DNA of 64,000 bases. Origin: Vitrella brassicaformis CCMP3155. Lineage: Eukaryota > Protista > Chromerida. The translations under genes and the position numbers were made by a program. Location: assembly GCA_001179505.1 (NCBI GenBank), contig CDMY01000320.1, forward strand, positions 58,750 through 122,749, in the 5' to 3' direction. Of this stretch, positions 27,228 to 45,387 are shown one piece after another. The notes below the pieces were generated by a model. It saw only the letters and a program-made list of their open reading frames with translations. It had not been told where the DNA came from and made no database searches. Numbering within the stretch: position 1 is the first letter of the stretch; every line of letters starts with the position of its first letter.

Positions 27228-30200
27228 GTGAAACGCTTTAAGAGCTGGCTTAGCTCGCGTTGTCGTCGTATGGGATCAAAGATGTCAACAGGAGACGTTC
27301 AGCAGCTTCCTACAGGCGGCCCGCCACAGCTGCGTGACGTGCAGCCCGGCGCTCATCCTCAGGAGCGAGATGCGGACCACCAGCAAGAGACCCCTGCTGC
27401 TCCACCGGCCGTCAAGCTCCCAACCGCAGCAGCAGCGGCAGCAGGCGAGCACGATGAGCAAGAGCAGGCCGGCAAGAAAACGACGGACCCGCCAGCATCC
27501 TCCGCCACCAAGGGCGATGACGGCATGACCCACCTCCCACACACCTCTCTGGAGATGCCCAGGCGAGACGACCTCCCTGCACAGCCCGGCGGAGCACCAC
27601 CAGCAGCAGCAGCCCCAGAGTCTCCGTCGTCCAGTGCGCATCAACACCAGCAACAACCGCAGGAGCAACAGCAACAGGCGGGTCCATCGCAGGCGGCGGA
27701 GTCCATCGACAAGCGGGAGCAGGAGCTGACGCCCAGGAAGGCGGAGAAGGTCGGAAAGAAGCTGCTCCGGAATGCGGACAAGGTTGCGCGGCGGAATGGG
27801 ATGGTGGCTGTGCCCTACATCCGGTTCGACATAGGGCCGCCGCCCACCTACGTGTGCCAGCCGCCAGGTGCGGAGATTGCCAGGTGCTTCCCTGCAACGG
27901 CGCACACCACCAATGCCGTGAAAGGCGCCATGTGCAAGGGACTGGCGTACCTGAGCGACTACATGGACGGACAGCAGGAGAAAGGGCGAGAGAAAACGAC
28001 CGGGTCAGAGCTGGGGCCGGGCGAGGGAGAGGGGGAGTGGATGGACGGCGCCGGCAAGGACAGCGACAGCGAGGCAACCGACGAAGAGGACAAGCCGAGA
28101 AAGAAGAAGCGTGGCGCCGGCGAGCTGACCGACGCCGAGACTGCCAAGTTGGGGGGGGAGATCCTCAGCTACCTCGCCGACCGTCGGCTCATCAAGTGGG
28201 TGCCCAAGCAGCTGGCCTACATGGTGGCCAGCCGGTCGTTCCCGTGCGAGGAGCGCAGCCAGCATGGCGTGAGCAGTGCCCTCGGCCAAGCTTTGGTGGC
28301 GAGGCGGCAGATGTACCCGACCATCAAGTTCTTGTCGCAGGGCCAGGCGGGCGAGTACATGGCGCTGGTGGGGGGTGGCGAGAGTAGCGATGAGGACTCT
28401 GACAAGGATGAGCAGGGGGAGGTGGAGAGTGCTGACGGAGACAGCGACCGGCCTGCTGGGGGCGACAAGGGGAGGTACGTATGCACACATGGGACGGGAT
28501 TGAATAAATGGACGGCGGGCTCTTTATGATGTGTTTGTGTGTTTCGGTATGTGGGTGTTGTGTCTGCAGGTGTGGTTCTGGTGGTGGGATACCGGATGAC
28601 GCCATGGAAGGAGCTGAGGTCCGCAGACACAAAACAGACCAAAGATATTTTCCAACCGCACCCGCCCCACTGTCGATGTGTGTGTTGTTCTTACAGCTGT
28701 CCCGACCTCTCCCCGTTCCCAAGCGCAAGCGCACCGGTGCCATGCCCCCTCACGCTCCCCCTCTCCCCCTCTCGTCGAATGATGAGCCCGCACCCGACGC
28801 ACAAGACCCCACACCCGAGGCGATCCATCCCACGTCGGCCATCGTCGCCATGACCTCCCCCAACGGCCATGCTCCCGACAAGGAAGCCAACCAGCCCGAG
28901 GAAGACGACAGCGAGACCGACGAGGACATCCGCCGCCCCCGCAAGCAGCGGCGGCCGAAACGCCGCATCGCCGACGGCTCTCTCGACCTATCCCTTCTGC
29001 CCCGGCAGGCACCCAACGCAGGAGTGTCGCCCGAGGACGATGAGCCTCTCGCTGAGCGGCTCAAGAAGACCAAAGCTGAGAGGAGCCCGCGCGAGGCGAG
29101 CAACGACACTCGTGGTGGTGGTGTGGGTGAGAAGGGCGAGACGGGCAGCACACCAGGGGGGCGGCAGAGGTCGCGCGTGGCGCCTGGCGTGCCGTGGGAC
29201 ATGCAGGGGGACTCGATGGCCCTTGGCGGCACCCTGTACACCACCCTGGGACAGGCCCGCGTTCGCAGGAGCGGGCGGGTCTTCGCGCACAAGCAGCAGC
29301 AGCCTGGCGCGGAGCCCTCAAACGCATCGGCCAGTGTGTCGGGGGCAGGAGGAGGGGGCGGGGGAGGGGGCGGGGGAGGNNNNNNNNNNNNNNNNNNNNN
29401 NNNNNNNNNNNNNNNNNNNNNNNNNNNNNNNNNNNNNNNNNNNNNNNNNNNNNNNNNNNNNNNNNNNNNNNNNNNNNNNNNNNNNNNNNNNNNNNNNNNN
29501 NNNNNNNNNNNNNNNNNNNNNNNNNNNNNNNNNNNNNNNNNNNNNNNNNNNNNNNNNNNNNNNNNNNNNNNNNNNNNNNNNNNNNNNNNNNNNNNNNNNN
29601 NNNNNNNNNNNNNNNNNNNNNNNNNNNNNNNNNNNNNNNNNNNNNNNNNNNNNNNNNNNNNNNNNNNNNNNNNNNNNNNAGGTGGGGGCAGTAGCGCGGC
29701 GGGTGGGCCGAGGCGGCCCATGTCTGTGCGGCTTTTGGAGAGCTCCATGTGGCAGCTGGTGCACGAGAGTCCGCGTGTGAGTGAGGCCAAGAGGCTGGGG
29801 GAGGGGGAGGTGTTCACCTGCCCCCAAGCGCAGCACGGGACCGAGTATGAGGTGGATGTGCTCTTGGCCATCAAGCTGAGGCCGGGCAAGGTGTGCTTCG
29901 ATGAGAGTGGGGTGCCGGACCTCTCGGCGTTCCTGTACCTCATCCGATGGAAGCACTGGCCGCCTGATCATGACGAATGGGGTAGGGAACACGACAAGAG
30001 AGAGAAGGACACTGCTTGCTGGTGTGTGGTCACAAACATATCACTGGTTTCTTTCTTTCTTTCTCTCTCTCGTTCCTTGTGTGGTTGTCTGGTATGTATG
30101 TGCAGAGAGGCACACTTCCCTCGCGGGCAGCGTGCTCAAGCGGGAGGCGGCCAGGCTGCGGGTAAGCAAGGCGTAGTTCCCGGCACAGCTGATATGTGTG

Positions 30201-30363
30201 TGAACCTATACTGTCTGTCTGTGTCTGTGTCTGTTAGCGTGAGTGGGTTGAGAAGCATGGCGAGGCCTTCAAAGAGCTGCTCCGCGCCAGAGGCATCGAT
30301 ATCGCAGTCGACGACGGCAGTGGTAGTGGCAGTGGGGGGCAGGCCGCCTCAGCCGCCACATAG
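27228..30363 (+). CDS. AP2-like (x2) plus chromodomain protein (cluster gene 1), interrupted by an assembly gap
   Basis: AP2-like VPYIRFDIGPPPTYVCQPPGAEIARCFPATAHTTNAVKGAMCKGLAYL (~27805-27960) and IKWVPKQLAYMVASRSFPCEERSQHGVSSALGQALVARR (~28190-28310). Chromo EYEVDVLLAIKLRP..FLYLIRWKHWPPDHDEW|ERHTSL (~29840-30130). Last exon REWVEKHGEAFKELLRARG..AT*, TAG 30361-30363. Confidence 0.7.
29380..29679. other. Assembly gap (300 N) inside a coding exon, flanked by G-rich tracts
   Basis: Run of N preceded by (GGGGGC/A)n. Confidence 0.99.
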
Positions 30364-30739
30364 ATCAGACACATAGGAGGGGAGTAGGGGGACCTGACTC
30401 AGTCGCTGGCTGGGTGATGGGTGCAGTGGGTGCAGTGGATGGGTGGGTGTGGTGTGCTTAGACAGCGACAGAGAGGAGGGAGGGGGGGGATGGAGAGGGG
30501 GGGGGGGGGGGGGGGGGTGTGCTACGTGCATTTGTATACCAATCGACGCATCCAGTGATGCGTATGTATCTGGAGCAGCGGACACACTCACGCAGCGCCT
30601 CTTAGCATGTCGATGTGGTTTAAGTCCGTTCATCTAGCCACATTTCTAATTCATATGCTAACTCGCCATTCATTTGTGTGCACACGGCTCACCCACTCAC
30701 TGACTCAGCGAACCTTTTTCTCTCTACTCAGTGACACAC

Positions 30740-32427
30740 CCTTTCTACACATGCATACGGTGGCTGTCGTGTGTGCATCTGCCTTTGAAATTTGCCGGGA
30801 GACACAAGTATCTGAACCACACACAGAGGGGGCAACAAAGGAGGAATCGAATGTCTGTGCGTGTGTGTGTGTGTGTGTACCTCTGGTGGAGTGCCCCCCT
30901 CCTCCAGTTGGGACACTGCATACGTCGCGCTGGCCGGCACAGAGCCGTCCTGCAGAGAAAATGAAGAGAGCTGTCCTCTCTTTGACTGTGTGCGTGTGCA
31001 CGTGTGACTGGTTGACCTGATTGTAACGTTGAAAAGCCCCTGCGCCGACATCTGCGGACTTGATGGTGCCCTTCTTGTCAACAAGCTGCAGCGACCAGAC
31101 AGAGCAGGCAGTGGGTATGCATTCACCCATTCCTCTGTTTGTGCACCTGTTACTGCATACCCACCCACCGGCTGGCGCCGTTCTCACTCATCGCCCCTGT
31201 CTCGCCGAGGTGGTCGCGCTGTGTGCGCCATCATGCAAATTCTCGTAGTGATACACTGTAGGCCTGCATATCACGGACACACAAACAGACATGTGGATGA
31301 CCCGCTCTGAACTTCTGCTAGCTACATGGATGGATGGATGGATGTATTCATACCATGTCGAGTGAAGCATGGTATGAATACTCACTGAGATGTCGAATGA
31401 TGTCATCCTTGTTGCGTACTGAGTAAGCCACTTTTGTCAGCTTCGTGCCGCACCCTGAAACCTGCGCCGTCGCTTCCAGGTAGGCACCCATGTCGAGTAG
31501 TGACGGAAGTTGCTTTCTCTCCGGTACTTCAGCATATAAAACGTACGCAGCGATGGGCCTGCACACCATAGAAGAAAACAAAGAGGGACAAACGAAGGCC
31601 TCTTTGAGAGACATGGCGCCCGCTCCCACCTTTGATCACCCTTTGTCTCCGGCTGATCGATACAAAGAAAATGGAGGCGCCCCGGCTGGCAACACAAGAC
31701 AGCTACGTGTGTTGAGGGCCATGTCGTCCTTTACCACTTGGCGTAGAGGGTCGGAAAAGCCGTCTGAACCTGCCACCGCACAGCCACGCGCCACAGACCG
31801 GTGTTCATTCTTCAAGGGGGGAGGGGAGGGAGGGAGGGAGGGAGGGAGGGAGGGGAGGGCTGCTCACCCTGTCCATTCGTTTTTCCTCCTCATCATCGTC
31901 GTCCTCGTAGTCGGAGACGCTCCCTCTTTTTCTCCCTCTCCGTCTCCCTCTCCGTCTCACGTCGGACTCCATCTTTCTCTGCTCCTTATGGTCGTCGTCC
32001 TCGTTGTCTGAAACGTTGTCGGAAGCCGAAATTGCACCGTGGCGTCATCCTCGGCTTCCTTCTTGCTGCGGGTGTTCTTGCGCAGCTCGATGCCCCACTC
32101 CCACCCAGGCATGACCGGCTTCAGCCTCTGCTGGCTCGATTGGGGTTGCTGCTCTTCCTGCGCTCCCTCCTCTCCGTCTCCCTGTCCCTCTTCTTCTCTT
32201 CCTCCGTCTCCATATATATAAGCGGCTTCTGCATCCCGCTTCAGCCGGTCGCGGGAAGGAGCACGGGCTGCACGGCTGCGATTGAGGTTGCTGCTCTTCA
32301 TGCGCTCCCTCCTCTCCCTCTCCCTGGCCCTCTTCTTCTCGCTCTCCCTCTCTTCATCGTCGTCGTCCTCCTCGTCTGAGACGTTTGTCAGTGGACCAAA
32401 GTTGCACCGCAGCTTGTCCATACTCAT
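30740..32427 (-). pseudogene. Spliced, probably decayed gene related to cluster gene 2 (acidic/basic low complexity, weak chromo-like segment)
   Basis: ORF 31957-32427 carries RLKPVMPGWEWGIELRKNTRSKKE, shared with 32574+. The internal duplication CNFG..NVSD.EDDD is out of frame at ~32030. Downstream GT-AG flanked blocks include FYMLKYRRESNFRHYSTWVP (chromo-like STWxP), LVDKKGTIKSADVG and DGSVPASATYAVSQLEEGG. Confidence 0.4.
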
Positions 32428-32573
32428 TGCAGAGCGGCCTCAGTGCGGCCTGCTGCGATTGATAGAGCGGCCGGAAAGTACAGACCTTCCTTTTTAAATT
32501 CATTTGTTTGTCTCTGTCTCTGTCTTATTTGGGGTGGGGGCTCGCGTGAAACGCTTTCCGTCGGAAACTGAGG

Positions 32574-35445
32574 ATGCAGCGCCACAGGCTCAAACCAATC
32601 CCTGGGTGGGAGTGGGGAATCGAGCTGCGGAAGAATACTCGCAGGAAGAAGGAGGAGATGAGCAAGTGGGACGGGTTTGCAAAGGAACTGATCGAGAAGG
32701 AGCAAGAAGCAATGCAGACCAAGGGGCTGAAGGACGGGGGCGCGGCAGGGATCAAATGGGACGGAAAGAAACAGGAGTTTCAGGTAGATACACTCACACA
32801 ACATCGCGCTGTGTGGGAAGGAAAGAGAGAGACCACTGTCTCTGTCTGTGTTGGTCTGTATGTCCGTCTCCATGAGTCAGGTCATCACACCCCTCAAGAG
32901 GGGCTGCAGCAACGCCTACTTCTTCGCCCCGTCCCACCTGGACGAGCAGGGCATCCAGGAGGCCTTCAAACTCGCCTCGGCATGCCGCAACCACCACACC
33001 AAACCACCCAAGGAGCCAATGGCCAATGGACGTACGCAAAAAGACAGGGGATACATAAGGGGTCACTTGTTGGATGGATGGATGGATGGATGTGTGTGTA
33101 TGCATCGTGTTTCCAGGGCTCAACAAGAGTGAGACCATCACGCCCGCATCCCCGCCCCCACCTCCACCTGCCCCACTCCTGCCCGCCGGCTTTGGCGACG
33201 GCGGATTCATTCCGTTCAAGAAGGAGACAGGCGACGATCGCCTCGACGAGCGCCTCGACGACCCCCCTCCGCGTCCGCCCCCCTGTCCACCCGTGATGTC
33301 TGCGTTTGACCGTCTGGTGGAGTACGTCAAGACCCTCTCACCGGCCCCGACCCCTCCACCCGAGGAGCATCCCTTCCAGTCCATGATGGCCCCGCACCTC
33401 GACCCCCATGTGCGTGTCCGTGAGGGCGCGGGTGACGTGAGATCGTATCGCATGAAGGACGAGGAGGGAAATGACGATATGGGCGACGGCGAGGGGGAGG
33501 GCGAGGGCGAGGGGGAGGGGGAGGGGGAGGAGGAGTGGATGCCCCTCGGCCCGAACAGCAGAGGCGGGGGCCGCCGTGCCAGTGCTAGTAGGTCGGGACA
33601 GTCGCAGCCCAAGGTGGGCAAGACCAGGTCGGACGAGACGGGGGACATGTCTGTGGTTGGTGGTCTGGAGGATGATGGGGGCAAGAAGGCCCGCCGTGAC
33701 AAGAACCGACGCTTCTGGCTGCCCCAGACCTCCCATGCAGACGAGGACGACTTCCCCGAGCACAACCACCAGAAGCAGAAGCCCCGCCGCCGCCCATCCA
33801 TCAACCACTCCAACAACACACTCGACGGCGAGGAGCAGGACAGCATCATCGAGGGCTCAGGCGGAGACGGCAAGCCACGCAACGAGCCCCTCAAACTCCC
33901 CACCGACCCCGACGCAGCCAAGGAGCTCAAGGACACGCTGTGGGCGGCGTACGAGCGCCTCAAGCGTGAGAGGGACGCCAGATACATCACGTTCAACACC
34001 CGCTGGTTTGCTCTCCTGCTCCGTGTGCCGGGCTGCCGGGATGTGAGGCGCCGCGTCATGACGGTCGCTGACATGGAGGTCGCATTCGACGAGCACCTCG
34101 CCCTGCGTCAGGAGCTCTTCGAGCGTCTGCAGGGTACCCGGAAGGACAAGGATGGGGCGACTGTGGTGCGGCGGGCCAGCAAGGGCGCACTCTCGTCTCG
34201 CATGCAGAGTAGTGAGGATATGGAGATTGATGGGTTGGGGGCGGGATTGGGGCTGGGGCTGGGGCTGCCTGACGGAGACGTGAAGATGGAGTTGCCTGAG
34301 GTTGGTGTGGGCCGGAAGGACACGGTGGACACCGATGAGGGGCAGGCTGCCATGATGATGAGCATGGAGGAGGGGGAGGGATTCGCCGGAAGAGAGATGA
34401 AGAACGGAAGAGGTGCGCCGCTGTGGGCAGACAGAGAGAGACATGACTGGGGCAAGGTGTCCATCCATCGCTTTGCCGTCTCTGTGTGTGTGTGTGTGCA
34501 GGCTCAACCAAGCGCACATTCGACATGTCGCCGCATTCATCGAAGGTACATACGTGAGCCCGTCCCTGAGTTGAGTCTGTGAAGCTTGCACCACTATCCA
34601 CGTGTATCTATCTATTGGTGTGTCTGGACGGACGGATGGCATACATAGCAGAACGAGAAGGAGGTTGGCGAGCCGTGCGTGCCGTCCCGACCCAAGAAGA
34701 GCCGCCACAGGTCACCCTCGCCGCGCTCGCCCAACAACGCCAACACACACAGCACCAACGCACCCAACAACTTCACTTCTTTCGACGACCCTGCCGTTCT
34801 GCAAAAGGTGGGCGGAGTGACCTGACCCCACACACATAGCATAAGAAGCGAGAGAGATGCGCTGCATGTCTCTCTCTCTCCCTCTGTGTGTGTGTCCATT
34901 GCAGGCCTGGAACCCTGTATACCTCCGTGACGAGCCCCCCATGTACTCGACCGAAGGTGAGTGAGGTGGGAGACGGGCACATCCAAGGACTCACTTCACA
35001 AGGCATTTGTTGTCTGTCGGTGTGGATGTGTCTCGACACACCGGGACAGCATGCCTGAGCCCCCGCCGCGTGACGTCGCTCAAGAAGATCAAACGCAGCG
35101 GCCGATTCCTCAACATCTTCCTCGTCCAGTGGTGGGTCATCCAGACCACCCAGGTTCACGCGGGTGTATTGTATGTCTCTTCGTGTGTCTAGGTGCGGCT
35201 ACCAGAGTTCTGGTGTGGTCCCGCCGCCCTCGTGGCTGTCGGAGGCCGTGCTCGACGAGCGATACCCCAGACTCGTCAAAGAATACTACAAGAACCGACG
35301 AGTGTGTGAGCGGAGGGATGGGGCGGAGGGGATGATCCATTCTACTGACGCGAATGAACGTGTGTCTGTCTGTGTGTGTGTGTGTCTCCCCTTGGTGTCT
35401 GCCTTTGGTGCAGCCGAAAGGGAGTGTGGTGCCGCCCACGGCTGA
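32574..35445 (+). CDS. AP2-like (x2) plus chromodomain protein (cluster gene 2)
   Basis: AP2-like GIKWDGKKQEFQ|VITPLKRGCSNAYFFAPSHLDEQGIQEAFKLASACRN (32746-32995, intron 32784-32880) and RYITFNTRWFALLLRVPGCRDVRRRVMTVADMEVAFDEHLALRQEL (~33978-34120). Chromo VTSLKKIKRSGRFLNIFLVQW|CGYQSSGVVPPPSWLSEAVLDERYPRLVKEYY (~35070-35290). Confidence 0.7.
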
Positions 35446-35733
35446 GGAGACCTACCTGCAGACGATAATGGAGCACAGTGCCTGAGCTGAGTGGAGGAAG
35501 AGATGGATAGATAGAATGACCGACCGACCGACAGACCAGATGGCGAACATCCATGGCTGTATGTATACAGACGTAGATACACACACGTGCCTCCGTTTAG
35601 AGGAGTGCGAGGGGCATTCAATGGTACGTGCTGATGGAAAATCTATTGACTTGAACGGCACAGAGGATACTCACGCTTAAGCATCTCCGCCATGGGTTTA
35701 GATGGTCCGCAAAGAAGCCTCCCTCTCTGCCTG

Positions 35734-35945
35734 TCTCTGTTTGGCATTCTGGTGGTGCGCGTGTCTGTCATTGCCCGTGTGGAGCGGCATCGACCGGCTT
35801 TGATGAAAGCCACTCGACACAGCTCCAAGGCTGGCTCGACAGGCTCAACGCACCAGCAGAAGTGCCCCACCGCCACACTGCACACGGATGAAGGGACGGG
35901 TGGGCGGATGGGATGAGTCAGACACACAGACAGTCACCAGTCACA
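35734..35945 (+). repeat. ~210 bp non-coding direct repeat, copy 1
   Basis: ggcattctggtgg.gcgcgtgtctgtcat..gctttgatg.aagccactcgaca..gacaggctcaacgcaccagcagaagtgccc..cacactgcacacggatgaagggacgggtgg, also present at 39601-39810. Confidence 0.9.
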
Positions 35946-36486
35946 CCTTCACACATGCCTACAGCCATCGGCACGCAAGAGCGAGGAGAGCCGCCCATTC
36001 GACTCACTCACTCACACACAAGAGATGACACCCCACAGGCGAGCAGCCTGCAGGCGAACAACACTTACACACAGCTCGTCAGTGCCGATGTCCGGCCAAG
36101 CAAGGGACTCTGCCTGCCTGCCTGCCTGCCTCCTCCCGTATCGACAAGTAGCTAGGTAGCAGCAAGAACAGCACAACCAACACAACACACCACACGGACC
36201 CACGGGCCTCCCTCCCTAGATAGTCAGGTCGCAAACTCAGTAAGGGAGAACTACTTGATTAAGGCATGCCCTTCTCGCTACATCGTGCGATCGAAAACGC
36301 ATGCACACACGCATCACATCCCATCGATGGGCGCGTTCTTTCATTCCAAATGCACTCACGCCCTCCCCCCTCCCTCCCCCCTCCCTCCCTCACAGCTGTG
36401 TGTACGCAGTACACACACACACACACACACACAGACACACAGGCACACGGAGCAATTTGCTCCACTGAAAATCCCCTCCCTCCCAG

Positions 36487-37946: not shown

Positions 37947-38145
37947 GAGCCTCTTGCCAAAGCCTGGCCTCTCCACCCCCTCTTTCAAGCCCAGTTTTAA
38001 GCTCGCAAAGATCTTCCGTGAAACCGCTCGGTGGCCAATGACTGCACAGGCCGCCTAGGGGGCTACCTAAAACCACCGCCTAGACGCCGCTCGTCCATCT
38101 ATCCTCCATCTGCATTTCCGTGCACTCAGTCTTCAACAGTCAGCT

Positions 38146-39065
38146 ATGTTTCGTGTGTCCTGCGTCGCGATCTTGGCTCTGGCCGCGTCCCTCAGCCATG
38201 GCTTCGTCCTCCGCAGCCCCGCCAGGCAGAGGCTCGCTGCAGCCGCTCCACAGGGCCAGAGATGTGCAGCGAGGTACCGTGTGTGCAGGCAATGCGTCGG
38301 GAGGCTATGCATGAAGGTGGGGGCACAGAGATCTGCAGATCTGTCATTGCATTGCAGTCTGTGTGCCCTTCCCTTCCTGCTGATTGCAGGTTGGAGTGCT
38401 GTTCAGCACATCGACAGGCAACTGCGAGACGGTGGGCGGCTACATCGTCCAGGCGGCCAAGGCGGCGGGGCTCGACGTCGACGATCTTAAAGAGGTGGGT
38501 GTGCCGCCACTCACACAACCATCCATCATCAGACAGCTTTTGTGCGTATGGGTCTGTCTGCAGGTGAGCGAAGCGCGTGAGATCGAGAAGTACAGCGGCT
38601 TGATAGTGGGCGCGCCGACCTGGAACACGGGAGCCGACTCCGAGAGGTCGGGCACCTCATGGGACGAGTGGCTGTACAGCGACCTGCCCTCGCTCAACCT
38701 CAAGGACAAGAAGGTGGCTGTCTTCGGTGTCGGCGACCAGATCTCATACGGAGACAACTTCTGCGACGCTGCCGGTGAGCTCTACGACCAATTCCTCAAG
38801 GTCACCACAGCACAGCACACACCCACCCACACAGACAGACCGACAGACAGACCGAACGGCACCGACTCGTGGTCGTATGCAGGCTGGTTGTAAGATGCTC
38901 GGGTTTACCAGCACTGACGGCTATGACCATGACGACAGCAAGGCGCTGCTGCCCGACGGCCGTTTCTGCGGACTGATGCTCGACGAGGACAACCAGTCGG
39001 AGGAGTCGGAGGGCCGGGCCAACAAGTGGATAGAACAGCTCAAGGGAGAGGGCCTCTTCGCGTAA
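38146..39065 (+). CDS. fld: Long-chain flavodoxin with bipartite plastid-targeting presequence
   Basis: MFRVSCVAILALAASLSHG-FVLRSPARQR..MK|VGVLFSTSTGNCETV (FMN P-loop), IVGAPTWNTG, VAVFGVGDQISYGDNFCDA, long-chain insert GYDHDDSKA, GLMLDEDNQSEESEGRANKWIEQL. Introns 38317-38389, ~38495-38563, ~38791-38882. Confidence 0.93.
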
Positions 39066-39600
39066 ATGACACAATGGATGGATGAAGACGTCACAGACAG
39101 AGAAGACATCATTACTGGACTGGACTGCTGATGGAAGGGATGTGACTGCATGCGGTAAATTGGTGGGTGGGCATGTGGGGGTGCGTGCGGTGTGGGTGTG
39201 TGGGTGGGGACTGCATGAGATTTTCCCATGATGCGCCCGGCACGATCGATTTTCGACGGCTGACGGACTCGGGCCCTGATCGTCGCGTCGCCGACCTGTT
39301 GATAGGATAGACCTGGATGGGTTTCTTTGGGCAAATTTAGACTTTCGTGCACAGCGCCTGTGCAAAGACCTACCTGATTTCGACCACACCTTAGTGGCTG
39401 GCTGGCTCCTGCTCGTGTGACTTGCTTGCATCACTTGCGACCATGATTGCGTGTGTGGCTCTCTGTCGAGGGACGGATGCTGACTGATATTCACTGAGTT
39501 GTCAACGACGCAGTGAATGAACGGCACAAAGTATACTTACACAACTGGTCGTGGCATGAAGAGCTGGGTCTCTGTGCAAGCACGCGTGTCTCGCTCTCTA

Positions 39601-39810
39601 TCTCTGTGGCATTCTGGTGGCGCGCGTGTCTGTCATCGCCATGTGGAGCAATATCGACTGGCTTTGATGGAAGCCACTCGACAAAGCTCCCAACGTTTCT
39701 TTGACAGGCTCAACGCACCAGCAGAAGTGCCCCACCGACACACTGCACACGGATGAAGGGACGGGTGGCATGGTCGGATGGGTCATACACAGTCACACCT
39801 CACTCACTGC
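39601..39810 (+). repeat. ~210 bp non-coding direct repeat, copy 2
   Basis: Roughly 80 percent identical by eye to 35734-35945, same orientation. Confidence 0.9.
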
Positions 39811-40008
39811 ACCAGTCACCAGTCGCACATGCCACTCAATCCACCTAGGTAGCATGTGCCGCATGGCCAATCGAGAGGACGATCGACCATCTCGCACACA
39901 GCCAGAAGGTGGTTGAGTGGTATGTATGAGGGCTCACACACACACACACACACGTGATCGCATACACGCGGACAGACCATCAATCACACGAATCAATCAA
40001 CCAGTCAG

Positions 40009-43000
40009 TCACGCAAGAGGGAGGCCCTCATCCCCGATCCCCTCCTCGCCATTCCCACCATCCACACCCACACCTACACCCCCTCCCGTCATCGGCTCCT
40101 GCTTGACACGCACCAACTCACCACCACCACCACCACCCCTGTCATCTCCCCCGTCCGTCCGCTTGTCCTTTTCCTCCCTCATCCGCGCCACCTGCTCGGC
40201 CACCCTCTTGCGCAAAGACTCGGGGGCGTATGTGATGTCGTACTGGGCGCAGAGGGCAGCGGCGCGTGTGGCCATGACGGGCAGGGGTGGCGGGGTCCCT
40301 TTGGCGGCGGAGTAGTCGTCGTGCCACTGCCAGAAGTCGGGCCATATGACGGCGTACTTTGAGCTGTTGACGGGCTGCTGGTGGTGGTGGGGGCGGGCCA
40401 GGCGGGCGGGGGTTGCGGACGATGCCGATGCTGATTCTGCATTTGTGGAGACAGCCAGATAGACAGACAGACAGACACATGCTGTCCTCCCTCCTGCTCT
40501 GTTAATGTGGAGATGTGTGAAGGTGTGCACGTACCACTGGCAGCGGCGGCAGCAGCTGCAGCCGAAGCCGATTGGCTCCTGTCACCATCACCAACACGCT
40601 TCCTCTTGCCCACCTAATCACAGACAGACAGACAATGCATCCGTCCATGCATCCACCAATGCCGCCTCTCGACACATGCCCTTCTCGCTGCTCACCTTTT
40701 TATCGACATCGTGTGCCATGTGTCGTCTAGTCTTGGCTTGCGCCTGCTGTTGGCGAGACCGGAGAGACGAGAGCCGGCCTTGTGCGGCACGGGGGTCCTG
40801 CAGCCGCACCGTCCGTTTCCTGCCCAGCAGCTGGTGCCAGGGAGACAGGTTTCTCTCCACCCACACACTCTGATAACCACACGAAGCATGTCATCCCATG
40901 CAGACAGACACCCATGCCATGCATGTGTGTGAATGGCGTGTGTGCCGGCTGGCTGGCTGACTCACCTTGAGAGTCTTGGCCGTGTCCTTGATTCCTTTTG
41001 TGTTGAGGTGCTCTTCGGGCTCCCACGTGTCGCCGCCCTTGGGCCACTCGCCGCCCGGCCACCCGTACCAGCGGATGAGATACTCGAAGCTCACAGGGGA
41101 CCCACTCACACTGTCCAACTCTGCATGAGCACGCAAAAGAGCCTGTTGTGTTGTGTTGTCCCCCATTGCGTGTCCGCTCTTTGTTTGTGTCACCCACCTG
41201 TCTGTGTGCGTGGTCGGAGGGCGATGATGTGTTCGGCCTCATACTCGCCAGTGCTAGAGAGTGCGGCGGGCTTGGTGGTGCGGGCGGCAGTGCCGCGCAC
41301 CTCCTCCTCGGTCAGCTGCGGGTTGACCACGGTCAAGTCCTTCTGCTCTTGGGGGCTCAGGTTGGCAACGCCCACCCACTCGGGCGTCGGGGCGTCGGAC
41401 TCTGCTGAATCGTCATCGGCGTTACGATCCACTCTGCCGAGGGCACCCTGCTCACGGTGTGGGGCGACCGGTGGCTGTGGTGTTGCTGGCGGTGGGAGGG
41501 CGGCTGCTGCTGCCGCTGCTGCCGCTGCTGCGGGGGGCTGCTCGGGCACCACCACCACCTGCAATGGACAATACAACAGAGGAGAGAGATGCAGACATGT
41601 GTGTGTTATCGTGGTGTGCTGGCTGTGCGTACCTCTGATAATTCAGCGATGCCGTTCACTTGGTCGCTCTCTGCGGCGGCTGCTACTGCTGCTGCTGCTG
41701 CTGCGGCGGGTGGCTGTTCCGCCGGTGCAGCCATCTCCTCGTCAGCCCTCTTCTGCTCGCCTTCCATGGTGCCTTCCTCTCCGCCCTTCTCTGCCCAGCC
41801 CCCAGACACCGTGTCAACCGCCATTGGCACGGCCGCCTCACCACCACCGCTAGGCCCACCACCCCGGGCAGCGCTGGCGCCTTCCTCCTCCTCCTCCTGC
41901 TTTGTGGGTTGGTTGGCAACCTCCCCAGTGCCCATGGACGGCGGCTGCTGGACATCCTTGATCGCCTTGTCGGCCTCCAGCTCCTTGACCCTCGCGGCCG
42001 CTGCTGCCGCCCTGCTGATGAGAGACATCCCTCCCGACGCCGAGCCGGCAGATCGGGGTGGGGAAGGCTTCGGATGTTTCGGCTGCTTCTGCTGCTTCTG
42101 CGGGGTCTTGGTCGTGGCGTGGGGCAGCGAACTAAGCTTTGGTGGGGAGGGCGAGATGAGCGACGCCTTGTATGCAATGGCGCAACTGAGGGCCTCCTCG
42201 ATGCCCCTCGGCGTCAGGCTGACTGGGGGAAAGAGCTTCTGCGGCTCGTCGGCACCCCTGACGCCGATAAGCGACACCCGCCAGACCTGCTGCCGCGGCA
42301 GCCAGTAGATGGACGGCAGCCGCCCCTGCGCGCTTAGGTCCGCCAGCAACTTCTTGGCGGTCGCGTTGGCTTCCTCCTCGCTCATCAAGAGGTGGTGCTC
42401 GCGGGGCCGCTTCTCCTTCTGCTTTTGTTTCTGTTTCTTGTTGTTGGCTGCCGCGGGGGGTGGGGGCGGGGCGCTCTTCTTGCGTGACGATGGGGGAGGT
42501 CGGTGGCGCCTGGGTTTGGCTGCTCTTGGGGCGGCGGCTGCGCGTGCGGAGAGGGCGTTATCGTCAACATCTTCATCGGCGTCCCAGGGGAAATTCTCGT
42601 CCTGCATCTTCTTGATCGACCTGACACCACAGCCGGACACACACAGACACACGTGTATGCGGGATTCTGCGGCCCATCTGTGTGTGTCTGTGTGGATGTG
42701 TCGCTGTCTCACTTGGGCAGATCGACGGGAGGCATGTTGTACTGCTGCAGGACGGTGTTGCGACAGGTGAGTGTCTTCCTCAGCGCGTCTCGGACGCCGT
42801 CGACTGTCCACTCGTGCGGGCGGTAGCTCCCCAGCTCCTTGACGGTCTGGTCCTGGAACACCCGAGACACGAAGTGACCCTCCTCACTCATCCAGTCGAT
42901 CCCTACACCATCACAATACACACCACAAGGAACGAACTTGGTTGGTCGCTCTGTCTGTATGGTGTGGCGGGTGTGTGACGAGTCTGGGTACCAAGGACAG

Positions 43001-45387
43001 GTGGCGGTGAGAGCAGGTCCGTCTCCTGCTTGAGGGTCTCCATCATGGCCTCGGCGATCCTCTCCCCCCTCTCACGCACCACGTCGCGCCCCCCGCGCAC
43101 CGCCGACGGACACGGCAGCACCGGCAGCTGGAACATGGGGGGCATCGGCGGGCCGCGCGAGGGGGAAGCCCGGGGCTTCGACATCCTCTCCTCGAATGAG
43201 AGGGTCTGGTCAAAGGTCTTGGTGCAGTGCATGCGCATGAGCTCCGGCATGGTCATTTTGAGCATGTCGGGGGGCACCTGGATCGGCCGGCAACCCACCT
43301 CCGCCGCCAGCTTGTTCCTCACAGCCATGGCCTGGACAAACGCTGCGCGAATGGCGGAGAAGGTGGGGCGCTCGGGAACGATACGCCGGCTGCCGTTGGG
43401 CCAAAGGCAAAACAGGCGAGGGATGGGTGGTTTGATGGTTGGTGGTGGGACGGTTGTGATGGCCGTGGTCTTTCTTTCTTACGGAGTGTGTCCGTCGGTG
43501 TCTTGGGGGAAGTGGCAGCGGAAGGCCCACGGCTGCACGCCACTGGGGTCGCAGTGGACATGGACAGCAACACCTGGCAACACGAATCACATACAAGATA
43601 TTTCTCTCTCCATCTCGTTCCCTCCTTCTCCCGTCCTCTGTCCAATACACACCTGCGTTGCCCATCTGCTCAGATGGTGTCTGCCTCTTCACCGCCTCAA
43701 TCATCCGCCGCCCAAGCATTATCGCCCGCCCGGCATTCAGCTCCACTTCCTCTGGCTCATCCGCTGCCGCCGCAGATGGCTGCTGTTGCTGTGGCTGTGG
43801 CTGGGCCGGCCCGGCCGCCTGCACCTGCCGACGAGTCTTGGGAGGGCTGGGAGGGATGCTCGCGATNNNNNNNNNNNNNNNNNNNNNNNNNNNNNNNNNN
43901 NNNNNNNNNNNNNNNNNNNNNNNNNNNNNNNNNNNNNNNNNNNNNNNNNNNNNNNNNNNNNNNNNNNNNNNNNNNNNNNNNNNNNNNNNNNNNNNNNNNN
44001 NNNNNNNNNNNNNNNNNNNNNNNNNNNNNNNNNNNNNNNNNNNNNNNNNNNNNNNNNNNNNNNNNNNNNNNNNNNNNNNNNNNNNNNNNNNNNNNNNNNN
44101 NNNNNNNNNNNNNNNNNNNNNNNNNNNNNNNNNNNNNNNNNNNNNNNNNNNNNNNNNNNNNNNNNNGGGGGGGGTGGTCGAGAAGATGGGCGACATGCCG
44201 TCGTGTGGGTGAGGGGGAAGTGGGCCAGAGAAAGGTGCCGCGTGGGGCAGGAAGACGGGAGCGCGGTATCTCGGCTGCTGTGGCTGATGTTGAGGTGGGC
44301 GAGAAGGTGGCGCATCGCCCGGCGCCATGTTGGTCAGCCGTGCCACCGACGGCGAGCCCTCGCGCATCATCTCCTTAATCACCTGCTCTGGCGGCTTTCG
44401 TGGCTCGTTCGGATCTATGGGGACGAGGGGCTTGCTCGGACGAGCGGTCTGCTTCTTCGGTGGTGGGTGATGCGCCTGCTGGCCAGCCTCGACTGGCATG
44501 CCGGCAGAGATGGTGGAAAGCGGAAAAAAAGAGCCGGGCATTGGTGGGTTGTGTGGCGGGCTCGTCACAGGCGGGCGGAGTGGTGGGACGACCAACGGTC
44601 GTGGTGCTGGTGGTGGTGGTGGTGGTGGTGGCATGGCCTGTGCCATGTTTGCAAGGGTGTTGTACCCAAAGCCAGCTGAAGCAGGTGAAGTGGCTGCAGC
44701 GCCACGACCACCTGAGCCTGGGCCTGGAGCACCTGCACACACACACACACACACACACACGGTCCACGTAAAGCATATTATCTGTGCTCGCATGTACGTG
44801 TGTGTGTGTGCGTGTGTGTGTGTGTGTCAGCCCTCTCGGTGCGTGTGCGCTTACCGCGGTGATACTGCGATACGGCCGCCAGACTGCGTATGAGCTGCTT
44901 CCTGTCAACGGGGGGTGGGAGTTTAGGCACCACATCAGCACCAGCACCAACACCAACAGCAGCAGGGGCGGCAGCGGCGGCAGCGGTCTGACTCAGAGGT
45001 TGGTGTTGTTGAACAGGTGGGCAGGAGGTGTCAGCTACACCGTTGGTGTGCTCTGGTTCAGAGGGACCACCAGCAAGCACCCCCTCGCCGACCACCTCAA
45101 TCTCAGGACCCCCAGCCTCATGCGAAGCACGCTGATCCCCTCGCTCCTCATCCTCACTCACGCCCTGCACACACCACACAGCACCGAGATCACCGCATGT
45201 GTGCGCATGTGTCGGTGCATCTTGCCCGTGGTGGCATCCGCCGTACCTGTGCTTCACCCCCCGCTGCTGCGGCGGCCTGGTGTGATGGTGGGGAGGGCGG
45301 CATGCCACCGACGCCGTTGGTGAGGGGGCGAACAGCGCCTGAATCATCCTCTTCCACACGTACTGGGACACGCGCTATCTCATTCAT
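40009..45387 (-). CDS. AP2-like (x3) plus chromodomain protein (cluster gene 3), interrupted by an assembly gap
   Basis: AP2-like VHCDPSGVQPWAFRCHFPQDTDGHTP|RRIVPERPTFSAIRAAFVQAMAVRNKL (~43310-43575), GIDWMSEEGHFVSRVFQDQTVKELGSYRPHEWTVDGVRDALRKTLTCRN (~42755-42902), PSIYWLPRQQVWRVSLIGVRGADEPQKLFPPVSLTPRGIEEALSCAIAYKAS (~42160-42320). Chromo EYEAEHIIALRP|..FEYLIRWYGWPGGEWPKGGDTWEPEEHL (~41000-41250). Confidence 0.75.
43867..44166. other. Assembly gap (300 N) inside a Pro-rich coding exon
   Basis: Run of N adjacent to a poly-G tract. Confidence 0.99.

What the first reader, a model, noticed from the sequence alone, without database searches (positions are those of the whole stretch)
27228..45387. 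Cluster of three genes that each fuse multiple AP2-like DNA-binding domains to a C-terminal chromodomain
Within 18 kb, three otherwise dissimilar genes share the order AP2 x2-3, long disordered linker, chromodomain. Most of the seven AP2-like units fit a common pattern: [GS]IxW or equivalent strand, a hydrophobic second strand, [FY]xP, then G[IV]xxA[LF]xxAxxx[RK] (YFFAPSHLDEQGIQEAFKLASACRN; YRPHEWTVDGVRDALRKTLTCRN; LFPPVSLTPRGIEEALSCAIAYKA; SFPCEERSQHGVSSALGQALVARR). ApiAP2 factors are the main alveolate transcription factors and in Plasmodium/Toxoplasma recruit chromatin readers such as HP1 or MORC in trans (established). A covalent AP2-chromodomain fusion family, clustered in the genome, is not something I recognise from the literature. 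It could be a sequence-specific heterochromatin targeting system analogous to KRAB-ZNF clusters (inference).
Basis: partly seen in the sequence, partly recalled or inferred. Interest (0 to 1): 0.85.

Follow-up and report, generated by a model that had tools for sequence, protein, structure and literature searches.

The report
AP2-like plus chromodomain genes in Vitrella
Three neighbouring genes of the alga Vitrella brassicaformis, a free-living relative of malaria parasites, each appear to join ApiAP2-type DNA-binding modules to a chromodomain (a reader of methylated histones) in one protein, a combination I could not find described; the evidence is solid for one gene and only partial for the other two.

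Summary
The window is the last 64 kb of Vitrella brassicaformis CCMP3155 contig CDMY01000320.1. All four quoted peptides are present. Three multi-exon genes have GT-AG introns and open frames: 27270-30363 (+), 32574-35485 (+) and 45387-40009 (-). The deposited annotation has the same starts and stops. Each gene has the order AP2-like units, low-complexity linker, chromodomain.

Domain support is uneven. No unit hits Pfam AP2. A profile of the seven units does match bona fide AP2 domains (hhalign 96%, E 3e-9; controls 0.2% or less). An AlphaFold model of one unit has a three-strand-plus-helix core (pLDDT 83), and its best PDB matches are ApiAP2 chains, at weak E-values. Taken singly, four units are well supported, one moderately and two not at all. 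Chromo is the only Pfam family hit: 27.3 bits in gene 1 (above cut-off), 22.1 in gene 3 and 16.8-18.5 in gene 2.

Gene 3 is solid. Genes 1 and 2 each have one weak half. A cDNA contig confirms gene 2's chromodomain splicing, and a metagenome relative keeps gene 2's whole architecture. The genes are divergent paralogues separated by unrelated genes, not a KRAB-ZNF-like array. UniProt labels gene 3 only as a chromo-domain protein, and I found no paper describing the fusion. Function is inferred, so I class it as a new variant of a known kind, of moderate interest.

The parts
27270..30363 (+). Gene 1 CDS. Exons are 27270-28474, 28570-28618, 28697-29981 (with N gap 29380-29679), 30106-30161 and 30238-30363. 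My model is 906 aa including 100 X; the deposited model is 766 aa.
   Evidence: GT-AG splicing and an open frame. The deposited model has the same start and stop.
Not supported.
   Evidence: hhalign against the family without gene 1 gives 1.4%. An HMM built only from external units does not detect it. The single-sequence AlphaFold model was uninformative, with pLDDT 39.
28188..28313 (+). g1u2, an AP2-like unit (LIKWVPKQLAYMV...ALVARRQM). Moderately supported, with a shortened beta2-beta3 region.
   Evidence: hhalign against the family without gene 1 gives 69%, E 4.4e-5, against a reversed control of 0.1%. The external-only HMM gives 9.3 bits, E 0.07. Against the AP2 set A3 it reaches 10%.
29843..30282 (+). 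Gene 1 chromodomain plus C-terminal helix extension, split over three exons (29843-29981, 30106-30161, 30238-30282). Aromatic cage residues are Y, W, W.
   Evidence: Pfam PF00385 scores 27.3 bits, above the 25.1 cut-off, E 3.4e-6. YLIRWKHWPPDHDEWE aligns without gaps to CBX7 YLVKWKGWPPKYSTWE (output, read directly).
32574..35485 (+). Gene 2 CDS, 723 aa. Exons are 32574-32783, 32881-33031, 33117-34412, 34502-34545, 34652-34807, 34905-34956, 35050-35131, 35193-35301 and 35414-35485.
   Evidence: Splicing. The extra exon and six introns are confirmed by cDNA contig L004, which is 100% identical. The deposited model has the same start, stop and length.
32748..32997 (+). g2u1, an AP2-type unit (GIKWDGKKQEFQ|VITPLKRG...ASACRNHH) with an intron at 32784-32880.
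   Evidence: hhalign against AP2 set A3 gives 90%, or 93% with orthologues added. Against the family without gene 2 it gives 95%, E 3e-8. The external-only HMM scores 21.3 bits. It is conserved in relatives P0003 and L005.
Not supported as AP2, but strongly conserved.
   Evidence: hhalign gives 0.2-2%. It is nevertheless the best-conserved stretch outside the chromodomain in the relative on L005, where 56 of the first 60 aligned residues are identical.
34941..35301 (+). Gene 2 chromodomain, split over three exons (34941-34956, 35050-35131, 35193-35301). Cage residues are Y, W, Y.
   Evidence: Chromo is the only Pfam family hit, E 1.9e-3 to 6.7e-3 at 16.8-18.5 bits, below the cut-off. Two of the three aligned sequences (gene 2 and two spliced relatives) hit it, best E 6.6e-4. 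Splicing is confirmed by cDNA L004. The gene 2-only profile finds no PDB chromodomain, and hhalign to genes 1+3 gives only 1%.
40009..45387 (-). Gene 3 CDS, equal to CEM02204.1 / UniProt A0A0G4EUS3. It has 12 exons, with N gap 43867-44166 inside exon 3. My model is 1463 aa including 100 X; the deposited model is 1348 aa.
   Evidence: My hand-spliced model equals database protein P0001 except at the gap. Identity and name come; coordinates.
43308..43653 (-). g3u1, an AP2-type unit (GVAVHVHCDPSGVQPWAFRCHF...AMAVRNKL) spanning three exons.
   Evidence: hhalign against the family without gene 3 gives 95.7%, E 1e-8. The external-only HMM scores 17.1 bits over the C-terminal half. Alone against AP2 set A3 it reaches only 3.5%.
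42748..42992 (-). g3u2, an AP2-type unit (GIDWMSEEGHFVSRVFQ...LTCRNTVL).
   Evidence: hhalign against the family gives 97.6%, E 3e-12. Against AP2 set A3 it gives 73%. The external-only HMM scores 38.8 bits, E 4e-11.
42158..42313 (-). g3u3, an AP2-type unit (SIYWLPRQQVWRVSLIG...AIAYKASL), preceded by a helix.
   Evidence: hhalign against AP2 set A3 gives 92%. The AlphaFold2 model has pLDDT 83 and topology H-E-E-E-H. The Foldseek top seven are T. gondii mitoribosome and Pf 3IGM chains. Five are named AP2-domain chains and two are deposited as ribosomal protein RPL22, at weak E-values of 0.08-0.24.
40825..41246 (-). Gene 3 chromodomain plus helix extension, split over three exons (41198-41246, 40966-41120, 40825-40869). 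Cage residues are Y, W, W. A tail of about 210 aa follows.
   Evidence: Pfam PF00385 scores 22.1 bits, E 1.4e-4, and is the only meaningful hit. The profile of the three genes' chromodomains plus one spliced gene 2 relative (A4) hits 48 PDB sequences at E<=1, 47 of them chromodomain proteins, with CBX7 best at 4e-4.

Best explanation
These are three diverged paralogous nuclear genes of Vitrella brassicaformis. Each encodes a long, mostly disordered protein. The protein carries one to three DNA-binding modules of the ApiAP2/dinoflagellate AP2 type. These belong to a Vitrella-expanded subtype with an extra N-terminal helix, too divergent for Pfam's AP2 model. The same polypeptide carries one HP1/Polycomb/CDY-type chromodomain with an intact aromatic cage.

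The most likely working mode is two-handed chromatin reading. The AP2 modules recognise DNA motifs, and the chromodomain binds a methylated lysine on a histone tail (H3K9me or H3K27me type). The protein would then dwell preferentially on methylated nucleosomes that carry its motif. No catalytic or known effector domain is present, so it would act as an anchor or adaptor rather than an enzyme.

Shown: the gene structures, the joined architecture, the AP2-type and chromo-type homology (graded by unit), the cDNA support for gene 2's 3' half, and conservation of gene 2's whole architecture in a relative.

Inferred: nuclear location (from basic KRKR-type clusters), DNA binding, methyl-lysine binding, and any link to heterochromatin.
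For: Architecture.
- The spliced models are open with GT-AG introns.
- They match the deposited models in start and stop, and gene 3 matches in full sequence.
- cDNA contig L004 (JGI sample 3300017297) is 100% identical. It joins the 3' end of gene 2's large exon 3 (from window 34285), an exon that also carries g2u2, through six introns to the chromodomain exons and the 3'UTR.
- Metagenome contig L005 (60% GC, 35-62% identity) holds the N-terminal motif, u1, u2 and the chromodomain in the same order. The linkers are not conserved.

AP2.
- The window-only profile searched against 1.84 billion proteins returned Vitrella multi-unit paralogues and dinoflagellate-type AP2 proteins.
- One of those passes Pfam AP2 at its gathering score (P0011, 36.6 bits). 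Another is named an AP2/ERF protein by UniProt (P0013).
- hhalign of A1 against AP2 set A3 gives 96.1%, E 3.4e-9. Against three solved ApiAP2 domains only it gives 75%, E 2.6e-5. Reversed and column-shuffled controls give 0.2% or less.
- The top five PDB hits of the family profile are all ApiAP2 chains.
- The AlphaFold model of g3u3 has pLDDT 83 and a three-strand-plus-helix core, with ApiAP2 chains heading the Foldseek list.

Chromodomain.
- Chromo is the only Pfam family hit in all three genes.
- 47 of the 48 PDB sequences hit by the chromodomain profile are chromodomain proteins.
- Cage residues Y/W/W or Y/W/Y are present (and direct reading).
Against: - No unit reaches Pfam AP2 at any listed threshold.
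- Two of the seven units (g1u1, g2u2) have no AP2 support, and gene 1's better unit reaches only 69%.
- Foldseek E-values are weak (0.08-0.24) and none is at or below 0.001.
- The AlphaFold alignment and AP2 set A3 contain sequences that were themselves picked up by the window profile. That evidence is therefore partly circular.
- Gene 2's chromodomain is below Pfam's cut-off. On its own it finds no PDB chromodomain, and it does not align significantly to those of genes 1 and 3.
- No transcript evidence was obtained for genes 1 and 3, and both have assembly gaps in coding exons.
- No binding data exist. In Plasmodium, PfAP2-HC sits in heterochromatin without using its AP2 domain (PMC8105651).
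Confidence: 0.55

Rival explanations
1. This is a chromodomain protein with decayed AP2 relics. The AP2-like units no longer bind DNA specifically. The proteins are brought to chromatin by the chromodomain alone, or by partners, and the units serve as protein-contact or structural modules.
For: - There is no Pfam AP2 hit.
- Two units are beyond detection and one is marginal.
Against: - Four units keep a clear AP2 profile signal (95-98% against the family), and one gives a confident beta-beta-beta-alpha model.
- g2u1, and even the undetectable g2u2, are conserved in a relative at 35-45% overall identity while the linkers are not. This points to selection on the units themselves.
Confidence: 0.25
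2. The proteins have a non-chromatin role. The AP2-type modules bind RNA or act in an organelle, as the AP2-domain proteins built into the Toxoplasma mitoribosome do. The chromodomain would then be a protein-protein module, as in chloroplast cpSRP43.
For: - The best PDB sequence and fold matches are T. gondii mitoribosomal chains named 'AP2 domain transcription factor' (9fi8, 9g6k, 9hqv, 9i05).
- Vitrella is photosynthetic.
- From my own knowledge: cpSRP43 uses chromodomains for protein binding.
Against: - The chromodomain profile matches histone-reading CBX, CDY, HP1, MPP8 and SUV39 domains, and the aromatic cage is intact.
- The proteins carry several basic KRKR/RKKKR clusters typical of nuclear proteins (direct reading).
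- No N-terminal targeting-like extension was examined or evident.
- Long acidic, low-complexity linkers are typical of ApiAP2 nuclear factors.
Confidence: 0.07
3. This is a gene-model artefact. The chromodomain exons belong to separate short genes wrongly merged with upstream AP2-like genes.
For: - Genes 1 and 3 have 300-N gaps between the units and the chromodomain.
- No cDNA was found for them.
- The linkers are long and of low complexity.
Against: - In all three genes the frame stays open, through phase-compatible GT-AG introns, from the last unit to the chromodomain.
- The deposited annotation makes the same joins.
- The gene 2 cDNA starts inside the exon that also holds g2u2 and runs through the chromodomain.
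- A relative keeps units and chromodomain together on one 4.1-kb contig.
- The same 'error' three times in paralogues is unlikely.
Confidence: 0.05
4. These are remnants of mobile elements. The chromodomain would derive from a chromovirus-type integrase, and the AP2 fold from integrase or endonuclease DNA-binding domains.
For: - Chromo-fused transposons are expanded in the related alga Chromera velia (bioRxiv 10.1101/2021.11.30.470311).
- From my own knowledge: the AP2 fold is related to integrase DNA-binding domains.
Against: - No reverse transcriptase, integrase, RNase H or transposase family was hit anywhere in the three proteins.
- The genes have many introns, sit among housekeeping genes, and are single copy in the window.
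- There are no terminal repeats around them.
Confidence: 0.03

Closest known systems
ApiAP2 / alveolate AP2 DNA-binding proteins (e.g. P. falciparum PF14_0633 / AP2-EXP domain, PDB 3IGM; PfSIP2 tandem AP2, PDB 6SY0)
   Same: - Modules of about 60 aa with three strands and a helix, in one to several copies per protein, set in long low-complexity proteins.
- Profile-profile and fold matches point here first.
- The family is expanded in chromerids (PMC4501334).
   Different: - The units are too divergent for Pfam PF00847.
- They carry a conserved extra N-terminal helix.
- AP2 domains are described as usually the only globular domain of ApiAP2 proteins (PMC4117751). Here a chromodomain is attached.
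HP1 / Polycomb CBX / CDY-type chromodomain readers
   Same: - The chromodomain profile hits CBX7, CDYL, CBX2, SUV39H1, LHP1, MPP8 and HP1.
- The aromatic cage positions are kept.
- Gene 1 aligns to CBX7 without gaps across WK.WPP...W.
   Different: - There is no chromoshadow domain, SET domain or other partner domain, so these are not HP1 or SUV39 family members.
- Insertions occur between the first strand region and the YLIRW motif (genes 1 and 3) and before TWEP (gene 3).
- A family-specific helix extension (E/V)WVE(K/R) follows in genes 1 and 3.
PfAP2-HC and other heterochromatin-associated ApiAP2 factors of Plasmodium
   Same: An AP2-family protein is physically tied to H3K9me3/HP1 heterochromatin (PMC8105651; PMC8989538).
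   Different: In Plasmodium the tie is made in trans, through HP1, and for PfAP2-HC it is independent of the AP2 domain. Here the methyl-lysine reader is part of the same polypeptide. Nothing is yet known about heterochromatin association in Vitrella.
KRAB zinc-finger gene clusters
   Same: Conceptually, a DNA-binding array is coupled to the heterochromatin machinery, and paralogues lie near each other.
   Different: - There are only three genes, with 31% identity or less, and unrelated genes lie between them.
- There is no corepressor-recruiting domain.
- The chromodomain reads a mark rather than recruiting a writer.
- There is no evidence of transposon targets or of rapid turnover.
Chromodomain proteins that also carry a DNA-binding element (CBX2 with AT-hook; CHD remodellers). 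From my own knowledge.
   Same: One polypeptide combines histone-mark reading with DNA contact.
   Different: Those DNA contacts are non-specific or belong to an ATPase machine. Here the partner is a transcription-factor-type, potentially sequence-specific module.

Membership tests
AP2/ERF superfamily (Pfam PF00847), ApiAP2 branch | Match to the Pfam AP2 model at its gathering score (33.3 bits) | tested here: not met
   None of the seven units hits PF00847 even at E<=5, and neither do the unspliced ORFs at E<=1. Database relatives found with the window profile do hit it: P0011 at 36.6 bits, and P0004 and P0006 at about 20 bits.
AP2/ERF superfamily (Pfam PF00847), ApiAP2 branch | Detectable homology to bona fide AP2 domains by profile-profile comparison | tested here: met
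   All seven units together against A3 give 96.1%, E 3.4e-9. Against three solved ApiAP2 domains they give 75%. Controls give 0.2% or less. By unit against A3: g3u3 92%, g2u1 90% and g3u2 73% are met. g3u1 is met only through the family (95.7%). g1u2 is inconclusive (10% / 69%). g1u1 and g2u2 are not met.
AP2/ERF superfamily (Pfam PF00847), ApiAP2 branch | Fold: a three-stranded antiparallel sheet packed on a C-terminal helix | tested here: met
   g3u3 only. The AlphaFold2 model has pLDDT 83 with E26-29, E34-38, E49-52 and H59-77. Five of the Foldseek top seven are named AP2-domain chains and two are deposited as RPL22. The best match has probability 0.99, TM 0.51 and rmsd 2.3 A, but all E-values are 0.08 or above. 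The gene 1 model failed, with pLDDT 39.
AP2/ERF superfamily (Pfam PF00847), ApiAP2 branch | Sequence-specific DNA binding | not testable with these tools
   This needs a protein-binding microarray, SELEX or EMSA.
Chromodomain (Pfam PF00385) | Match to the Pfam Chromo model at its gathering score (25.1 bits) | tested here: inconclusive
   Gene 1 scores 27.3 bits and meets it. Gene 3 scores 22.1 bits (E 1.4e-4) and gene 2 scores 16.8-18.5 bits (E 2e-3 to 7e-3), both below the cut-off. Chromo is the only family hit in each, and a spliced relative of gene 2 hits it too.
Chromodomain (Pfam PF00385) | Three aromatic cage residues at the canonical positions | tested here: met
   The pattern is Y...W..W in genes 1 and 3 and Y...W..Y in gene 2. 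The Y and the first W are invariant in alignment A4. The register against CBX7 was read. In gene 2 the first Y depends on the alignment.
Chromodomain (Pfam PF00385) | Binding of methylated lysine peptides | not testable with these tools
   This needs histone peptide arrays or ITC, with cage mutants as controls.
HP1 family | A chromoshadow domain C-terminal to the chromodomain | tested here: not met
   No chromoshadow or any other family was found in the C-terminal parts. These proteins are not HP1 orthologues.
KRAB-ZNF-like tandem repressor cluster | A large tandem array of closely related paralogues, each with a corepressor-recruiting domain | tested here: not met
   There are three genes with 31% identity or less. 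Three unrelated genes are interspersed. No further copies exist in the 64 kb, and no effector domain was found.

The most novel reading that the evidence does not exclude
These genes found an undescribed, chromerid-lineage class of chromatin factors in which a transcription-factor-type AP2 DNA reader and a methyl-lysine histone reader are hard-wired into one protein. Such a protein could mark or nucleate heterochromatin at specific DNA sequences without an HP1 intermediary. The fused state may reflect, or parallel, the ApiAP2-heterochromatin partnership that malaria parasites achieve in trans.
Probability: 0.3. Interest if true: 0.7.

Novelty: new variant of a known kind. Interest (0 to 1): 0.45.

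Why it matters
ApiAP2 proteins are the main specific transcription factors of apicomplexan parasites. Several are tied to HP1 heterochromatin, which controls antigenic variation and sexual commitment in Plasmodium. How DNA sequence and histone marks are coupled there is still debated.

A free-living relative that fuses the two readers into one polypeptide gives a natural, simple test object. Small recombinant domains could be assayed for DNA motifs and histone-mark preference.

The case also shows that highly diverged AP2 modules escape standard annotation, so ApiAP2 censuses and domain-architecture surveys in chromerids are probably incomplete.

The limits are plain. Domain shuffling involving chromodomains is common in protists, only one of the three genes is solid on both halves, and nothing functional is known.

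Tried and rejected
Searches and models that gave nothing.
- A concatenated-domain query to the word-indexed protein search returned nothing, not even the window's own gene 3 protein. This was most likely the candidate cap.
- The same search with gene 1's two units found nothing. Gene 1's units therefore have no detectable relatives and no deeper alignment could be built.
- The window-only unit profile against PDB sequences gave no AP2 hit. Only the enlarged family profile did.
- The single-sequence AlphaFold run on gene 1 aa 150-372 gave pLDDT 39 and was unusable.
- Both metagenome-collection scans for gene 3 transcripts or relatives came back empty. One used a protein query, for which the tool chose low-complexity patterns. 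The other used an exact 33-mer from the chromodomain exon.
- A gene 2-only chromodomain profile against PDB gave only noise. hhalign of gene 2's chromodomain to those of genes 1 and 3 gave 1%.
- tRNA and Rfam scans of the window found nothing.
- Searches of the chromerid genome paper's held supplements for Chromo or AP2 identifiers found nothing.
- The 154-aa neighbour of gene 2 has no detectable counterpart on the relative's contig.

Considered and rejected.
- Prokaryotic or viral origin: introns, microsatellites and the contig identity rule it out.
- Transposon origin: no transposon-type domains, single copy.
- Merged-gene artefact: see the rival explanations.

Full report
WHAT THE WINDOW IS

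The DNA has about 59% G+C, short GT-AG introns, CA/TG microsatellites and three 300-N scaffold gaps. One ORF of the window is carried at 100% identity on Logan contigs. The gene 3 protein is CEM02204.1 of Vitrella brassicaformis CCMP3155, UniProt A0A0G4EUS3, named 'Chromo domain-containing protein'. The window equals the last 64 kb of contig CDMY01000320.1 of assembly GCA_001179505.1, so window position equals record position minus 58749.

CHECKING THE OBSERVATION

I spliced the three genes by hand from the sequence. Each gives an open frame using only GT-AG introns.

- Gene 1: + strand, 27270-30363, five exons.
- Gene 2: + strand, 32574-35485, nine exons after correction.
- Gene 3: - strand, 45387-40009, twelve exons.

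The deposited annotation has the same start and stop for all three, with products of 766, 723 and 1348 aa. My gene 3 protein equals the deposited one except where the annotators spliced around the N gap.

The order 'units, long low-complexity linker, chromodomain' is correct in all three. In gene 3, however, a tail of about 210 aa follows the chromodomain.

The genes are not contiguous. A 154-aa gene lies between genes 1 and 2. A 418-aa membrane-protein gene and a flavodoxin gene lie between genes 2 and 3.

ARE THE AP2 AND CHROMO EXONS IN ONE TRANSCRIPT?

For gene 2 there is direct support. A 1517-nt contig from JGI sample 3300017297 (L004) is 100% identical to the window and lacks six introns. 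It starts at window 34285, inside the large exon 3 that also encodes unit g2u2. It runs through all chromodomain exons to a 3'UTR ending at 36359. It also revealed an exon I had missed (34652-34807), which brings my model to the annotated 723 aa.

A 4.1-kb metagenome contig (L005, ENA ERZ893784, 60% G+C) carries an orthologue on one strand and in the same order. It has the N-terminal motif, u1, u2 and the chromodomain at 35-62% identity, while the linkers do not align at all. That pattern indicates selection on the modules and on their linkage.

For genes 1 and 3 I found no transcript contigs. The support there is the open frame, the phase-compatible introns and the deposited models. Both genes also have an N gap inside a coding exon between the units and the chromodomain.

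ARE THE UNITS AP2 DOMAINS?

Pfam says no. There is no PF00847 hit for any unit even at E<=5. A profile of the seven units alone finds nothing in PDB sequences.

More sensitive tests say yes for most units.

- An exhaustive search of 1.84 billion representative proteins with the seven-unit profile gave 13 hits. They include the gene 3 protein itself and a close ENA relative of gene 2's N-terminus. The rest are Vitrella multi-unit paralogues (CEM28282.1 with six units, CEM12116.1, CEM30591.1, and a fragment 90% or more identical to part of CEM27122.1) and several short proteins with classic dinoflagellate-type AP2 repeats (GVxW...W.V...GK...FRPKD.T.EEIE.ARLAAV). Two hits were obvious false positives.
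- Among the AP2-repeat proteins, P0011 passes Pfam AP2 at 36.6 bits. P0013, from Prorocentrum, is named an AP2/ERF protein by UniProt.
- hhalign of the window-only alignment (A1) was run against a bona fide AP2 set (A3). A3 holds three solved ApiAP2 domains taken from the PDB output plus eight of these units. The result is probability 96.1%, E 3.4e-9, over 58 columns covering the whole domain. Against the three solved domains alone it is 75%, E 2.6e-5. Reversed and column-shuffled controls give 0.2% or less.
- The enlarged family profile (A2, 34 units) has ApiAP2 chains as its five best PDB hits: TgAP2IX-6 and Pf 3IGM at E 1.3e-3, then TgAP2VIIb-2.
- AlphaFold2 on g3u3 with A2 gives pLDDT 83 and the topology helix, three strands, helix. 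The Foldseek top seven are Toxoplasma mitoribosome and Pf 3IGM chains. Five are named AP2-domain chains and two are deposited as ribosomal protein RPL22. The E-values are only 0.08-0.24, as expected for a 60-residue domain.

Unit by unit, the picture is graded.

| Unit | vs family without own gene | vs AP2 set A3 | Verdict |
|---|---|---|---|
| g3u2 | 97.6% | 73% | well supported |
| g3u3 | 97.0% | 92% | well supported |
| g3u1 | 95.7% | 3.5% | supported through the family |
| g2u1 | 95.1% | 90% | well supported |
| g1u2 | 69% (E 4e-5) | 10% | moderate |
| g2u2 | 2% | 0.2% | not supported |
| g1u1 | 1.4% | 0.1% | not supported |

A single-sequence AlphaFold run on gene 1 was uninformative, with pLDDT 39. 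g2u2 is nonetheless almost invariant in the relative, so it is a constrained module of some kind.

There is a caveat on circularity. A3 and A2 contain sequences recruited by the window profile. The comparison with the three solved structures alone is the independent figure, and it is weaker.

ARE THE C-TERMINAL MODULES CHROMODOMAINS?

On the spliced sequences, Chromo is the only Pfam family hit in each gene.

- Gene 1: 27.3 bits, above the 25.1 cut-off.
- Gene 3: 22.1 bits, E 1.4e-4.
- Gene 2: 16.8-18.5 bits. A spliced relative of gene 2 also hits Chromo, best E 6.6e-4.

A profile of the three genes' chromodomains plus one spliced gene 2 relative (A4) hits 48 PDB sequences at E<=1. Of these, 47 are chromodomain proteins: CBX7, CDYL, CBX2, SUV39H1, LHP1, MPP8, Chp1, CHD1 and HP1.

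The three aromatic cage positions are occupied: Y/W/W in genes 1 and 3, and Y/W/Y in gene 2. Gene 1 reads YLIRWKHWPPDHDEWE against CBX7 YLVKWKGWPPKYSTWE.

Gene 2's domain is the weak one. Alone, with its orthologues, it finds no PDB chromodomain. It also does not align significantly to those of genes 1 and 3.

No chromoshadow, SET or other domain is present.

RELATIONSHIP OF THE THREE GENES

- Genes 1 and 3 share 31% identity over about 120 aa of chromodomain plus a helix extension (E 5e-9). They have a phase-0 intron at the same point, before (E/V)WVE(K/R).
- g2u1 and g3u3 share 30% identity over 79 aa.
- Leave-one-gene-out HMMs recover gene 2 (E 7e-7) and gene 3 (E 3e-6) but not gene 1.
- No other copy of either module exists in the window.

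The simplest reading is an old local duplication of an ancestral AP2-chromo gene, followed by strong divergence.

HOW IT PROBABLY WORKS

The shown anatomy is this: one to three AP2-type modules on flexible, highly charged linkers with several KRKR-type basic clusters, one cage-intact chromodomain of the histone-reading class, and no effector domain.

The best-supported model, which is inference, is a two-handed chromatin reader. The AP2 modules recognise DNA motifs and the chromodomain recognises a methylated histone lysine. Together they would give preferential residence on methylated nucleosomes that carry the motif.

The main rival is that the units have lost DNA binding and the chromodomain alone targets the protein. 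PfAP2-HC sets the precedent: it resides in heterochromatin via HP1 without needing its AP2 domain (PMC8105651).

Less likely rivals are these.

- An RNA-binding or organellar role, suggested only because the nearest solved relatives are mitoribosomal AP2 proteins of Toxoplasma.
- A merged-gene artefact.
- A transposon origin, for which there are no transposon domains, many introns and single-copy status.

COMPARISON WITH WHAT IS KNOWN, AND NOVELTY

The units work like, and are remote members of, the alveolate AP2 family. They fail Pfam's own threshold, so the membership claim rests on profile-profile and fold evidence.

The chromodomains belong to the canonical CBX/CDY/HP1 class, but the proteins are not HP1 family members.

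ApiAP2 reviews state that AP2 domains are usually the only globular domains in these proteins (PMC4117751). The chromerid genome paper describes an ApiAP2 expansion, including a cluster of 50 homologous genes in Vitrella, and makes no mention of chromodomains (PMC4501334). A survey of chromodomain architectures across eukaryotes does not mention AP2. Five full-text searches found no AP2-chromodomain fusion. Public annotation sees only the chromodomain in gene 3.

I therefore rate it a new variant of a known kind.

VERDICT

- Gene 3 is a solid AP2x3-chromodomain protein.
- Gene 2 has a solid AP2 unit and a probable chromodomain, with cDNA and cross-species support for the linkage.
- Gene 1 has a solid chromodomain and only a moderately supported AP2-like unit.
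- Function is untested.
- Interest is moderate (0.45).

Noticed in passing
window 35723-35926 and 39590-39791: A 205-bp direct repeat, 85% identical. Copy 1 lies in the 3'UTR of gene 2 (cDNA L004 covers it). Copy 2 lies 220-420 nt beyond the stop of gene 3, on the other strand. Together they bracket the membrane-protein and flavodoxin genes. There are only two copies in the window. Meaning unknown.
   Followed up: partly
window 32057-32112 and 32598-32653: A 56-nt inverted repeat, 89% complementary. It encodes the motif LKPxxPGWEWGIELRKNTRxKKE in two places: the N-terminus of gene 2 and the divergently transcribed 154-aa acidic protein gene (31957-32421, - strand). The two start codons are only about 150 bp apart. 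The motif is kept in the gene 2 orthologue on L005 (FEWGIQLRRETK). It has no Pfam hit.
   Followed up: partly
window 29380-29679 and 43867-44166: Two 300-N scaffold gaps sit inside coding exons of genes 1 and 3, next to poly-Gly or Pro-rich runs. The deposited gene 3 protein splices around its gap, and by length gene 1's probably does too. The deposited proteins are therefore likely missing residues.
   Followed up: partly
database protein P0002 (CEM28282.1, Vitrella): A 1652-aa paralogue with six tandem AP2-like units. Most units are preceded by a near-identical helix, ALDRYAKQRLAELRRLN. It has no chromodomain. This suggests a Vitrella-specific 'helix plus AP2' subfamily, possibly part of the 50-gene ApiAP2 cluster reported for Vitrella.
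   Followed up: partly
PDB entries 9fi8, 9g6k, 9hqv, 9i05 (outside the window): The closest solved relatives of the unit family include chains named 'AP2 domain transcription factor' that are built into the Toxoplasma gondii mitochondrial ribosome. AP2 modules can therefore be reused away from DNA.
   Followed up: no
window 40250-40300 (- strand, gene 3 tail): A Trp-rich stretch, KYAVIWPDFWQWHDDY, lies in the roughly 210-aa tail after gene 3's chromodomain. It matches no Pfam family.
   Followed up: no
window 43630-43653 (- strand): Translated in frame, this reads GVYWTEDG and looks like a textbook AP2 first strand. It is in fact the start of a 79-nt intron in the deposited gene 3 model. The real strand region, GVAVHVHCDPSGVQPWAFRCHF, is in the next exon.
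   Followed up: yes
database protein P0003 (ENA contig, 3707 bp) and locus L005 (ENA ERZ893784): Two metagenome contigs carry relatives of gene 2, one at about 95% identity and one at 35-62%. Uncultured close and more distant relatives of Vitrella are therefore present in public metagenomes.
   Followed up: partly
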